A DNA stretch of 63,969 nucleotides, the filler included, from Hausera hauseri (Eukaryota): the NCBI GenBank assembly GCA_046269625.1. It is 11 parts of 11 records of this genome, joined end to end, with 100 filler letters (N's around TTAATTAATTAA, not from the genome) between each part and the next. Parts side by side here need not be neighbours in the genome. Positions count along the whole stretch, not along the records: positions 28,984 to 35,866 come from JBJURY010055328.1; 10 more parts are not named here. One strand, 5' to 3'. Below the pieces are notes generated by a model. It was not told where the DNA came from. It worked only from the letters and a program-made list of their open reading frames with translations, and ran no database searches. Shown piece after piece: positions 29,748 through 32,792 of the stretch (its first letter is position 1; each line of letters begins with the position of its first letter). Position numbers and translations under genes: made by a program.

Positions 29748-29760
29748 AAAAAGACAAAAA
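29748..29760 (-). terminator. RNA polymerase III terminator (two T5 runs)
   Basis: TTTTTGTCTTTTT immediately after the 5S 3' end. Confidence 0.7.
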
Positions 29761-29824
29761 GGATCGGCACTGCGTATTCGCAATTTGTCTCTAATATAAC
29801 TATTAACGCAGCCCACTTAGTGTA
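29761..29824 (-). rRNA. 5S: 3' half of a divergent 5S rRNA gene
   Basis: GGGCTGCG-TTAATA-GTTATATTA-GAGA-CAAATTGC-GAATA-CGCAG-TGCCGATCC aligns without gaps to canonical GGGCCTGG-TTAGTA-CTTGGATGG-GAGA-CCGCCTGG-GAATA-CCGGG-TGCTGTAGG; CTGCGT/ACGCAG helix is compensatory; T5 follows. Confidence 0.8.
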
Positions 29825-32792
29825 AAATATATTTATTATATACAATTTTAACATCAATAGGGAAATCTATATCTCCTTCTTTTTTGCATAAGGTACGCAT
29901 GTCTTGCGATAAACAAGTAAACGATCAGTTACATATTTTTCGTGATCAGAGGAGTTATTACCAGTTTGTAGGATATATCGGTGACTGTGGTTATGTCTAT
30001 TCCAGATCATTGCTGAGATTTCCACACTTGCCATAGCGCAGTGTGATCTCAGTCTGTTCACAGCAGTATCGCAAAGGCCAAGTTCTTTTAGCACAGATTC
30101 ATTTGCCGGTGCCCACGATCCTAGCGCTCCGACGATTACAGTGTAAATATGGACTCGCCAACCAGGCAGCGCTGAACGAATATCTGACTGAAGATCTTTG
30201 TAGTGCTGCGTGTTGAATGATGCAGCGTTCTCGAAGTTTGTGACAGTGTCGTATGGCGTTTTTACATCGATGATGTAGAAGGCCTTGACAACTTCACATG
30301 TCACCTGAATGTCTGGTCGGAGGTTTCGGTTTGATAGTTTGCATTGTTGGTCGAATATGCATTCGATATCAGGTAATTTGGAGAGTGCCTCAGCTATGAG
30401 CCGTAACACTGTGTTGTGTCGATTTCGTACCAGGTGCATGTTTGCGGGGCAGTGGCATAGCACGTGTTGCAGCGATTCGTTGTCGTAATCGCATCGTCGG
30501 CAGGATTTGTTTTCATTTTCCGGAGCATCACGAGTAGCCAGGCAGTTGGTTCTTGCTCGATGGATAAACCGCCACGCGTATAAGCTTAAGCGATTAAAAA
30601 TAGCAGTGTTTACCATGGGAGAGAGTGCTAGCGTCATACTGCACTCGCCGTGTCGTTTCATTTTTCTCCAGTTGAATAAGTTTGCTCGACGTATCATATC
30701 GTGTAAAGCGTGAGTTAGACTTTGCTTCTTCTCCCGGCTGATGATCACTTCCTTGTGGGTAATGTTTGATGGCTCTGGCGTATGTCTGATCTTGATGTTG
30801 ATTTCGGGAGTTTGTATGAATGTTATACATATTTGACATGTAGAGGCTAGGTGACCAATTGCGTATCGGACTCTGTGCCACCAGGATGAGTTGGGATTAC
30901 GTTGAGAGCCAGCATTGAGCCAATCAAGTGCAGAAGATAAATTTGAGGGACTATTAGCGTAGTTTGCAGCGGTTTTGATTAATTCATTTTCAGCAATATG
31001 TGCCAAGGCTGTGTGTTCAGCAACCAGCATTTTGAATGCTTGCACTATGGATTGAATGCAGTATTCTTCGGTGATTGGTAAGAGGCCAATACCGCCCATA
31101 GATTTTTCAGTGTACATATATGCTGTAGGACAGTTTTCGTGGGAGAATGTCACCTTTCGGATGAACTCGCGAATCACTGCTTCAAGATGAGTCATTTTAG
31201 AGGGATATCTTGGGTCTGGCAGCATGTAGTGATTGAGGAATCCTATGGGAAACTCGACGTTACGAAATATAAACGTTAGCCTTGAATGAATAAAGGTATG
31301 GTAGGCATCGAGTTTCTGCCATGGTAATAAGTTGCTGTTCTCAATTTTAGTGAGATCAAGAATGCATTTCTGCATTAATTCGACTGGTGGGATCTTACCA
31401 CGTTTTGAAAAGTTCACTCCAAGATATTTGTAAGACAATCCATTTTCGATAATCGGGATAGGCTGATCGTGGATTATGAGATTCCGAGAATGCTTGTGAT
31501 TGTGGCTAAGATAACCACACTTCTTCGGATTAAAAGTAATATTGATTCTCTCAGCAAACCTCTCCGCACATTGGATCATTTGTTGCAGCCAGTTCTGAGT
31601 TTGAGCAATAAGTGCTAGATCGTCGGCGTATGCTAGGACTGCAACTTTTTGTTGGTGTAAACTGTATCCAAAGCTTAGCTCATTCGATAGCTCCATTAGG
31701 AGCGGGTTGATTCCAATGCTGAATAGTAGCATCGAAAGCGGACAACCTTGGCGGACACCAGTGCGAATTGGTAGGTATCCCGTTGTGATCGATCTACAGA
31801 TGTATGCGCATTCGCTTTTGGAGTAAAGCGCTTCTATTAAAGATATTAATTTTGCGAAGGTTGACGCATATTAATTCTAGGGGCACTGTTGGAAATGCTT
31901 CGCAAATATCCAAGAAGGCCACATGAATTGGGAGGATCTGATTGCGACTTTGATACTCAAGAATTGATGTCAGAGTAAAATTGTGCTCGGAGCATCCTTC
32001 GTATGGGCCCATGTTTTTCTGAAATGGGTGAAGAAGTCCTTCTGCTTTACACCAATGTTGTAGCTGGTGTGCTAAGCAACTTGTCAGAATTTTGTATACT
32101 GACGAGAGTAGGGCGATGGGTCTCCATGAGTCGATGTTGTTATAAGAGCCATCTTTATCTTTTTTTGGAATTAACAAGGTTTTGAAACGCGTCCATTGTG
32201 TTGGAGCCGTGCAACTTTCAACCACCTTGTTGAAAAGGTATTCCATGAGTTTTGCTTCAGGATCAGCATACAAGACGTCTCGATAAAAGATCGTGTCTTA
32301 TCCCGCCGCGGCATGTTTTAGTCTCTTAAGGCATTTAATGATTTCTTCGGCCGATGGACTATGAAATTGGAATTCCTACCCTTGAATTGTTGCGTAGCTT
32401 CCCTTCCAATTAACGGCTTTAGGTGGGTTGCCTTTCTGTATGAAATGTGCGACAATTGTTTCTTCGCTGGGGAACTCCGTAATTCTGGATACATAAAGTA
32501 TTTTTTCGATTGTTTCTTTTTTGTCTCTTAAATAGGATTTTCGAATGTTTTCACAAATTAGATCCCGTTCTGGTAATTTTGGATCGTGTCTGATATTTTG
32601 GGGCAGTGATTCATCAGAGCGCGATTGAAGAATGTGATCATAGATTTTATCTTCTGCCATTTGTGTGTTAGCTAACCATAGTGATCGCAGTAGGTCACTT
32701 GCCGCTTGTTTCTGGAAGCTTATAGAGTGTTTTCTGATTTTTGAATTTTGAGTTTCTGGCTGTCGAAGTTGGTGATTATGAATTTTCTTCAA

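What the first reader, a model, noticed from the sequence alone, without database searches (positions are those of the whole stretch)
29748..29870. RLE-type non-LTR retrotransposon apparently inserted into a 5S rRNA gene
Seen: the RT-RLE ORF stop (29867) and AATAAA are followed within about 10 nt by the 3' half of a 5S gene in the same orientation, beginning near the box A/helix II region, then T5 terminators. The 5S 5' half is absent here. Known: NeSL-group elements are site-specific (SL RNA, U2, tRNA, 28S); the 5S-targeting family I know, Mutsu, is an APE-type Tx1 element. Inference: possibly an undescribed 5S-specific RLE family, relevant to site-specific gene-insertion tools.
Basis: partly seen in the sequence, partly recalled or inferred. 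Interest (0 to 1): 0.82.

Follow-up and report, generated by a model that had tools for sequence, protein, structure and literature searches.

The report
NeSL-like retrotransposon inside a 5S gene
A decayed copy of a jumping gene related to R2 and NeSL sits inside a 5S ribosomal RNA gene, a target not so far reported for this class in the papers I could search, which would make 5S a possible new address for site-specific DNA insertion.

Summary
On the minus strand a non-LTR element (C48/Ulp1 protease, RT, CCHC plus restriction-like endonuclease) ends its ORF at 29867. It has a 49-nt 3' UTR with AATAAA and no poly(A). At 29818|29817 it meets 57 nt that are the 3' part of a 5S rRNA gene in the same orientation, followed by T5/T5/T4 runs.

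Rfam does not recognise the fragment. Public-run contigs settle the identity. The stretch 29690-29817 belongs to a unit roughly 170-400 times deeper than the element, and that unit leaves the window exactly at 29817. It continues upstream with a 30-nt stretch carrying the eukaryotic 5S motif CGTCCGATC. The fragment also keeps the 5S helix V, loop E, helix IV and loop D architecture.

The breakpoint is at about nt 60/61 of 5S, in the helix II 3' strand, which is box A in Xenopus-type genes. A copy about 89% identical in another run reaches the same junction.

Family-wide 5S specificity is likely but not proven. The 5' junction lies beyond the piece, only about 128 nt of the flank match the 5S unit, and copies could have spread by array recombination. 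The window copy is dead, with frameshifts and stops. I rate it a new variant of a known kind, of moderate interest.

The parts
29761..29817 (-). 3' part of a 5S rRNA gene (57 nt, about nt 61-117): helix II 3' strand remnant, helix V, loop E, helix IV, loop D and helix I 3' strand
   Evidence: It is part of the high-copy unit whose contigs continue upstream of 29817 with 5S loop B/helix III sequence (tables 2 and 7). It forms 11 of 13 canonical helix V/IV pairs, with loop E GAATA and loop D GAGA. Rfam is blank.
29742..29760 (-). Pol III terminator T-runs directly after the 5S 3' end (T5 at 29756-29760, T5 at 29748-29752, T4 at 29742-29745)
   Evidence: Read directly from the sequence.
29690..29741 (-). 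5S downstream spacer shared with the high-copy 5S unit. Below about 29690 the window no longer follows that unit.
   Evidence: The depth ratio of the two bins fits coverage of 29690-29817. Loose ends lie at 29690 (X4) and 29723 (X1, an indel variant) (tables 2, 4 and 7).
29818..29866 (-). Element 3' UTR, 49 nt, AT-rich, with AATAAA at 29832-29837 and no poly(A) tail. The element/5S junction is at 29818|29817.
   Evidence: Sequence. The junction is defined by the loose ends of 5S contigs at 29817 in all four runs (table 7).
29867..31870 (-). Open frame for the RT C-terminal half (AYADD at about 31619-31633), a linker, the CCHC zinc knuckle (about 30449-30502) and the restriction-like endonuclease (RPD...D.K core at about 30260-30313). 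The stop is at 29867-29869.
   Evidence: ORF list, Pfam RVT_1, alignment with relatives showing invariant C411, C414, H423, C428, D474 and D489, with K491 invariant among the closest relatives, and R2 proteins in the PDB aligning to both RT and RLE.
31797..32297 (-). RT N-terminal half, in a different frame from the rest of RT (a frameshift in this copy)
   Evidence: Pfam RVT_1 positions 1-99; frame map.
32379..33880 (-). Region between protease and RT, broken by in-frame stops (32793-32795, 33590-32592 region) and a frameshift near 33212. It includes a degenerate C2H2-like stretch in 33290-33589.
   Evidence: Frame map. Other copies carry an extra G after 33212 (table 4). No Pfam domain. The zinc-finger reading comes from eye inspection only.
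33919..34578 (-). Ulp1-like cysteine protease domain (Peptidase_C48) with His, Asp and Cys motifs present (HW..., LLD..., NNIDC)
   Evidence: Pfam PF02902, E 1.4e-07, above the gathering score.
34736..35866 (-). N-terminal low-complexity region rich in N, K and E. The element continues to the edge of the piece, so its 5' end and 5' junction are not in view.
   Evidence: Sequence and frame map. Other copies lack one base at 34732 (table 4).

Best explanation
A dead copy of a NeSL-like non-LTR retrotransposon lies in sense orientation inside a 5S rRNA gene. Its polyprotein is Ulp1/C48 protease, reverse transcriptase, CCHC knuckle and restriction-like endonuclease. The gene is cut 57 nt before its 3' end, at about nt 60/61, in the helix II 3' strand; this is box A of the internal promoter by analogy with Xenopus-type 5S genes.

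Most likely the family is sequence-specific for this 5S site, as other members of the RLE group are for their targets. By analogy with R2:
- the protein would bind the 5S DNA;
- the RLE would nick the strand that then primes reverse transcription from the element RNA's 3' end (target-primed reverse transcription), which gives a precise 3' junction with no poly(A).

The AATAAA lies 14 nt before the junction. This suggests a Pol II transcript that ends at the 5S boundary or a few nt past it, so a short 5S tail could help register the RNA on the nicked target.

The interrupted gene is inactivated, because its internal promoter is split by more than 6 kb. The host tolerates this because 5S genes are present in tens to hundreds of copies.

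Shown: the domain content, the junction position, the 5S identity, the high copy number of the target, a second diverged copy reaching the same junction, and the decay of this copy. Inferred: site-specific recognition, the nick position, and the mode of transcription.
For: Domains:
- Pfam finds RVT_1 in two pieces and Peptidase_C48.
- The CCHC and PD..D.K motifs are conserved in alignments with relatives.
- Solved R2 proteins align to both the RT (2.3e-15) and the CCHC-RLE region (2.3e-14), with a whole-sequence E-value of 2e-33.

Target:
- 29690-29817 is 170-400 times deeper than the element in all four runs.
- The contigs of that unit leave the window at 29817 (27 contigs in X1, and also X2-X4). 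They carry the 5S loop B/helix III sequence (tables 2 and 7).
- The canonical 5S arm forms 11 of 13 pairs, p about 5e-4 by shuffling.
- T-run terminators abut the gene end.

Family behaviour:
- X2 record 8 spans 29795-30250. It is about 89% identical and has depth 18.4 of the 21.4 total at the element's 3' end.
- It stops 23 nt into the 5S part. That is what a k=31 contig does when it runs into sequence identical to the bulk 5S (table 8).
- An X1 contig also reaches 29885 from the 5S side (table 7).
- The element-to-5S depth ratio is similar in all four runs, about 1:170 to 1:400.

Prior: four of the five RLE clades are mostly target-specific, and NeSL-clade members target SL1, U2, 28S and tRNA genes (PMC4640811).
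Against: - Rfam RF00001 finds nothing at E<=10 in four tries.
- The bridging contig overlaps the 5S side by only 23 nt, below the tool's own 31-nt rule for counting a bridge.
- The flank follows the high-copy 5S unit for only about 128 nt. At about 29690 it becomes unrelated low-copy sequence. At 29307 it joins DNA that is single-copy in X2-X4, whose contigs leave the window there. This copy is therefore not visibly inside a regular array.
- The 5' junction and the 5S 5' half are out of view.
- No related loci could be fetched to compare junctions (closed; empty).
- The human numbering and the canonical pair list come from my own knowledge of 5S, not from a tool.
Confidence: 0.62

Rival explanations
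1. A single, not sequence-specific, insertion landed in one 5S unit. It was then multiplied by unequal crossing-over or segmental duplication of the 5S array. Copies share the junction by descent, not because the element recognises 5S.
For: Only one junction type is seen, and only its 3' side. Tandem arrays do amplify inserted units. The copy number in X2-X4 is low, about 0.2-3 times the single-copy depth (table 2). The window copy sits next to non-array sequence.
Against: The copies differ by about 8-10% while the attached 5S part appears identical to the bulk 5S. The element occurs in at least four differently labelled organisms with hundreds of variant contigs in X1 (table 1). RLE clades are mostly target-specific.
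Confidence: 0.2
2. The 5S fragment plus about 70 nt of spacer travels with the element as a transduced 3' tail or as part of its 3' UTR. The real element end would then be near 29690, and the target is not 5S.
For: The similarity to the 5S unit stops at about 29690, and the sequence beyond is unrelated and low-copy. The recognised 3' UTR is unusually short at 49 nt.
Against: The tail would have to include three Pol III terminators and spacer. In X2 the diverged element copy's contig breaks 23 nt into the 5S part. That is expected if this part is identical to the bulk 5S, and not if it were a tail that had diverged by about 10% along with the element (table 8). No differences within 29690-29817 appear among the best-supported differences, while the element shows hundreds (table 3).
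Confidence: 0.1
3. The join is an assembly artefact, or the flank is a 5S-derived repeat (a SINE or satellite) rather than a 5S gene.
For: Rfam is blank. The piece is short and made of repeats. Contigs of other runs leave the window at 29307, 29447/29481 and 29690.
Against: An independent assembly (X2 record 8) has the same join. The fragment has complete 5S 3'-domain architecture, a length that gives a gene of about 117-119 nt, and terminators exactly at the gene end.
Confidence: 0.06

Closest known systems
NeSL-1 and the NeSL clade (NeSL, Utopia, R5/LIN, YURE; Malik & Eickbush 2000; Kojima & Jurka 2015, PMC4640811)
   Same: A single polyprotein with RT followed by CCHC and a restriction-like endonuclease. 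An Ulp1-like cysteine protease lies upstream of RT, as in nematode NeSL and Utopia-1_TSP. It inserts into a multicopy small-RNA gene. The best named protein relatives are from nematodes (Caenorhabditis japonica, Panagrolaimus).
   Different: The target is 5S rRNA. Known clade targets are SL1, U2 snRNA, 28S and tRNA-Arg/Glu/Pro genes or (TG)n. The closest proteins found are only 37% identical. Placement on the RT tree was not tested.
R2 (28S rDNA-specific RLE element)
   Same: RT and C-terminal CCHC-RLE are homologous (PDB 9nl2, 9dou, 8gh6). The 3' junction is precise with no poly(A), and the element sits in sense orientation in an rRNA gene.
   Different: There is a C48 protease domain. No Myb or zinc-finger N-terminal domain was detected. 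The target is a Pol III gene, so co-transcription with the host gene followed by ribozyme processing, as in R2, is unlikely.
Mutsu (5S rDNA-specific, Tx1 group, zebrafish; Kojima & Fujiwara 2004, cited in PMC11202950)
   Same: A non-LTR retrotransposon that inserts into 5S rRNA genes.
   Different: Mutsu has two ORFs and an apurinic/apyrimidinic-type endonuclease. This element has a restriction-like endonuclease downstream of RT and a protease, so the specificity arose independently.
Dada-5S DNA transposons (PMC8869645)
   Same: They target 5S rRNA genes as a safe multicopy site.
   Different: They are class II transposons with a transposase, and have no RT or TPRT.

Membership tests
RLE-type (R2-like) non-LTR retrotransposons | Reverse transcriptase with a Y/F-ADD motif | tested here: met
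   Pfam RVT_1 in two pieces, both above the gathering score. AYADD is conserved in the alignment. R2 RT aligns at 2.3e-15.
RLE-type (R2-like) non-LTR retrotransposons | CCHC knuckle and a PD-(D/E)xK restriction-like endonuclease C-terminal to RT | tested here: met
   C411, C414, H423, C428, D474 and D489 are invariant, with K491 invariant among the closest relatives. The R2 C-terminal domain aligns at 2.3e-14.
RLE-type (R2-like) non-LTR retrotransposons | No apurinic/apyrimidinic endonuclease upstream of RT | tested here: inconclusive
   No APE domain was found in any open segment in view. The 5' end of the element lies beyond 35866.
NeSL clade | Ulp1-like C48 protease upstream of RT (nematode NeSL, Utopia-1_TSP) | tested here: met
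   PF02902, E 1.4e-07, 32 bits against a cut-off of 20.7.
NeSL clade | RT groups with NeSL-1, R5 or Utopia in a phylogeny | not testable with these tools
   No reference sequences (Repbase) were available. The only hint is that the best named hits are nematode RTs at 25-29% identity.
NeSL sensu stricto | Insertion into spliced-leader (SL1) genes | tested here: not met
   The flank is a 5S gene fragment.
Site-specific retrotransposon (any clade) | Independent copies share the same breakpoint in the same target | tested here: inconclusive
   The window copy and a copy about 89% identical in X2 reach the same junction, and one X1 contig crosses it. The independence of these events and the 5' junctions were not seen.
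Mutsu (Tx1 group) | APE-type endonuclease and two ORFs | tested here: not met
   RLE lies downstream of RT and no APE was found.
5S rRNA gene (the flank) | Match to Rfam RF00001 | tested here: not met
   No match at E<=10 in four searches, including the exact fragment.
5S rRNA gene (the flank) | Multicopy unit whose upstream part carries the conserved loop B/helix III/loop C sequence | tested here: met
   Depth is 170-400 times that of the element. The loose-end consensus at 29817 contains CGTCCGATC...AAGC in all four runs.
5S rRNA gene (the flank) | Helix V, loop E, helix IV and loop D architecture, and Pol III T-run directly after helix I | tested here: met
   11 of 13 pairs in the canonical register, reached by 9 of 20,000 shuffles, with GAATA and GAGA loops. 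T5 follows at 29756-29760. The pair list comes from my own knowledge of vertebrate 5S.
5S rRNA gene (the flank) | Helix I formed with the 5' end of the gene | not testable with these tools
   The first ~30 nt of the intact gene were not returned by any tool.

The most novel reading that the evidence does not exclude
This would be the first restriction-like-endonuclease (NeSL-clade) retrotransposon lineage specialised for 5S rDNA. It would cut at one fixed position (about nt 60/61, box A), be present in several related host species, and have evolved the specificity independently of the APE-type Mutsu. Less decayed copies in other genomes could supply a protein that recognises 5S DNA.
Probability: 0.5. 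Interest if true: 0.62.

Novelty: new variant of a known kind. Interest (0 to 1): 0.52.

Why it matters
Site-specific RLE retrotransposons such as R2 are being developed for gene insertion at safe multicopy sites. Each new natural target widens the set of DNA-recognition solutions that can be compared.

A 5S-specific NeSL-type family would have three consequences:
- It would show that 5S specificity arose at least twice among non-LTR elements, once with an APE (Mutsu) and once with an RLE.
- It would add a Pol III gene with an internal promoter to the targets of the NeSL clade. That raises the question of how such an element is transcribed, since it cannot ride on the host gene's transcript.
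- It would give a handle on 5S array dynamics in the host.

The window copy itself is inactive, so the value lies in the family, not in this locus.

Tried and rejected
- **Rfam 5S detection.** Four searches were blank. I did not take this as disproof, because the read-laying and structure evidence outweigh it.
- **MFE folding.** Folding the 61-nt fragment alone gave z = -0.92 and did not reproduce the 5S fold. Folding the 91-nt partial gene did not either. Both are uninformative for a gene fragment.
- **tRNA genes and internal repeats.** None of note.
- **Search for the predicted 5S 5' end** (GGATCGGCA) in the piece. The only exact match is the complement of the 3' end itself.
- **Junctions of related elements.** A 24-nt word from the 5S fragment found nothing in viral, genome or metagenome contigs. 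Profile-based locus searches found no relatives.
- **Pfam on the N-terminal segments** found no zinc-finger or Myb domain.
- **GC-rich stretch 29590-29663.** I considered that it could be a linked small-RNA gene. Rfam gave no support and I left it open.
- **Big representative-protein search.** Not run, because the protein family was not in doubt.
- **Consensus or repaired element.** None was built.
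Full report
**Scope.** Only places 28984-35866 were used.

**What is there.**

The element lies on the minus strand. Read 5' to 3', that is from 35866 downwards, it contains:
- an N/K/E-rich low-complexity region (35725-34736);
- a Peptidase_C48 (Ulp1-like) domain (34578-33919; Pfam E 1.4e-07, above the gathering score);
- about 1.5 kb without a recognised domain;
- a reverse transcriptase split over two frames (RVT_1 positions 1-99 in 32273-31794, positions 128-205 in the last ORF);
- in the last open frame (31870-29870), a linker, a CCHC knuckle and a PD...D.K restriction-like endonuclease.

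Alignment with the 10 best database relatives keeps C411, C414, H423, C428, D474 and D489 invariant, and K491 is also invariant among the four closest. Solved R2 proteins align separately to the RT (2.3e-15) and to the CCHC-RLE region (2.3e-14), with a whole-sequence E-value of 2e-33. LINE-1 ORF2p matches only the RT, at about 1e-10.

The element is therefore an RLE-type non-LTR retrotransposon. The protease gives it the build described for nematode NeSL and Utopia-1_TSP (PMC4640811).

**State of this copy.**

This copy is broken. Its coding path changes frame at least four times (0, 1, 0, 2, 0) and has at least three in-frame stops. Copies in public runs carry single-base indels at several of these points, for example after 33212 and at 34732 (table 4). 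These breaks therefore look private to the window copy.

The 5' end of the element is beyond the edge of the piece.

**The 3' junction.**

After the stop (29867-29869) come 49 AT-rich nt with AATAAA (29832-29837) and no poly(A). The next 57 nt (29817-29761) end in GCCGATCC. They are followed at once by TTTTT, GTC, TTTTT, CA, TTTT.

**Is the flank 5S?**

Rfam says nothing. There was no match at E<=10 on the piece, on 191 nt, on 72 nt, or on exactly the fragment in truncation-friendly form.

The decisive evidence came from laying the contigs of four public runs, with four differently labelled (coded) organisms, on 28984-34983.

Summed contig depth in the bin 29584-29783, compared with the body of the element:

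| Run | Bin 29584-29783 | Element body |
|---|---|---|
| X1 | 196,742 | about 1,000-2,000 |
| X2 | 3,252 | 22-31 |
| X3 | 1,417 | 9-17 |
| X4 | 506 | 6-10 |

- The ratio of this bin to the next one fits a deep unit covering about 29690-29817.
- In all four runs the contigs of this unit leave the window exactly at 29817 (27 contigs in X1).
- The loose-end consensus, read in the sense of the element, is GGTCTCGTCCGATCTCTGATGTCAAGCATC. From my own knowledge of eukaryotic 5S sequences, this is the loop B/helix III/loop C stretch (CGTCCGATC...AAGC).
- Joined to the window's 57 nt, it puts the breakpoint at about nt 60/61 of a gene of about 117-119 nt.

In that register the window fragment forms all 5 pairs of helix V and 6 of 8 positions of helix IV. 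The two non-pairs are at positions that, as I recall, are also irregular in vertebrate 5S. It keeps GAATA on the 3' side of loop E and GAGA in loop D. Only 9 of 20,000 shuffles of the arm reach 11 of 13 pairs.

The pair list and numbering are from memory of vertebrate 5S, so this test is supportive rather than independent. Plain MFE folding of the fragment is uninformative.

I conclude that the flank is a genuine 5S gene 3' part plus its terminators and about 70 nt of spacer.

**Is the family specific for 5S?**

In favour:
- In run X2 a 458-nt contig (record 8) covers 29795-30250. It has 49 differences and 4 gaps, so it is about 89% identical.
- Its depth is 18.4 out of 21.4 total at the element's 3' end there. 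Most copies in that organism therefore end in this contig.
- It runs through the 3' UTR and stops 23 nt into the 5S part. That is how a k=31 contig behaves on entering sequence identical to a high-copy repeat.
- One X1 contig reaches 29885 from the 5S side (tables 7 and 8).
- The element-to-5S depth ratio is similar in all four runs (about 1:170 to 1:400), although their ratios to the left flank differ about 1,000-fold.
- Four of the five RLE clades are mostly target-specific, and the NeSL clade has repeatedly changed targets: SL1, U2, 28S, tRNA-Arg, tRNA-Glu, tRNA-Pro and (TG)n (PMC4640811).

Against, or unresolved:
- A shared junction can be inherited from one insertion that was multiplied within the array.
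- The window's flank follows the high-copy unit only down to about 29690. It then becomes low-copy sequence.
- At 29307 it joins DNA that is single-copy and identical in 10-21 kb contigs of X2-X4, and those contigs leave the window at that point (tables 7 and 8). This copy is therefore at an array edge, in an orphon, in a rearranged block or in a chimeric join.
- The 5' junction is out of view.
- I could fetch no relatives with flanks. The closest proteins are only 37% identical and come from unnamed metagenome contigs. All collection scans were empty.

**Mechanism (inferred).**

By analogy with R2, the protein would recognise the 5S DNA around nt 60. The RLE would nick the priming strand, and reverse transcription would start at the exact 3' end of the element RNA.

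The intact target has an inverted repeat, CTGATG...CATCAG, that brackets the breakpoint. This may or may not matter for recognition.

A 5S gene has an internal Pol III promoter, and the element contains many T-runs. Co-transcription with the host gene, as in R2, is therefore unlikely. The AATAAA 14 nt from the junction points to a Pol II transcript ending at the boundary or a few nt past it, which could leave a short 5S tail that registers the RNA on the target.

The interrupted gene is dead. In X2-X4 the 5S unit is about 30-800 times the depth of the single-copy flank, so the cost to the host is small.

**Comparison and novelty.**

In the searchable literature, the elements known to be associated with 5S genes are:
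- Mutsu (Tx1 group, APE type), which targets them;
- Dada-5S DNA transposons, which target them;
- Jockey-like elements, which are associated with the 5S arrays of Tribolium freemani.

No RLE family was reported on 5S. I could not check Repbase, Dfam or the large inventory of Fell et al., which is described in PMC13580325 but is not itself held.

I rate this a new variant of a known kind: a NeSL-type element with a new target. Interest is moderate. The result fits the known plasticity of the clade, the copy in hand is inactive, and family-level specificity still needs a junction survey.

Noticed in passing
window 28984-29307 and 29308-29689: The leftmost 324 nt are identical (0-2 differences) to 10-21 kb single-copy contigs of runs X2-X4. 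Those contigs then continue with different sequence at 29307. The next 382 nt of the window are nearly absent from all four runs. The block from 29308 onwards is therefore missing at this locus in those genomes, which points to an insertion, a rearrangement or an assembly join.
   Followed up: partly
window 29590-29684 (minus strand): In the sense of the 5S, a TATAAAAA (29684-29677) is followed about 15 nt later by a GC-rich, partly palindromic stretch of about 75 nt starting GGATCACC, and then by AAAATTTCGG, which resembles an Sm site. It could be a degenerate small-RNA gene linked to 5S, or a fragment of another repeat. Rfam finds nothing.
   Followed up: partly
window 30221-31338: In all four runs a contig joins 31338 back to 30221 with 7 extra letters between them. 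The depth of this 1.1-kb segment is about 1.4-1.5 times that of the rest of the element. Some copies therefore carry an internal tandem duplication, as a template switch during reverse transcription would produce (tables 2, 5 and 5c).
   Followed up: no
window 29817 and upstream in the intact 5S (loose end plus the window): The uninterrupted 5S has an inverted repeat, CTGATG-TCAAG-CATCAG, and the breakpoint lies inside its right arm (CATC|AG).
   Followed up: no
run X1 (tables 1-2): X1 lays 1,457 contigs on the element, 252 of them at 99% identity or more. Summed depth is about 1,000-2,000, against about 1 for the left flank. Either organism A has a very large number of copies, or the run is not plain genomic DNA of a genome that has this flank. 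The kind of run is not on record.
   Followed up: no
run X4 (tables 4 and 7): The 5S contig of X4 is about 267 nt long (27 + 129 + 111) with both ends loose. This would fit a short tandem 5S unit of roughly 240 bp. That is an inference from a single contig.
   Followed up: no
window 34736-35725 (minus strand): The N-terminal 330 codons are a low-complexity tract rich in N, K and E, with no detectable domain. This is unusual for the DNA-binding end of an RLE element, where zinc fingers or Myb motifs are expected. Only a degenerate C2H2-like stretch was seen by eye, in 33290-33589.
   Followed up: partly
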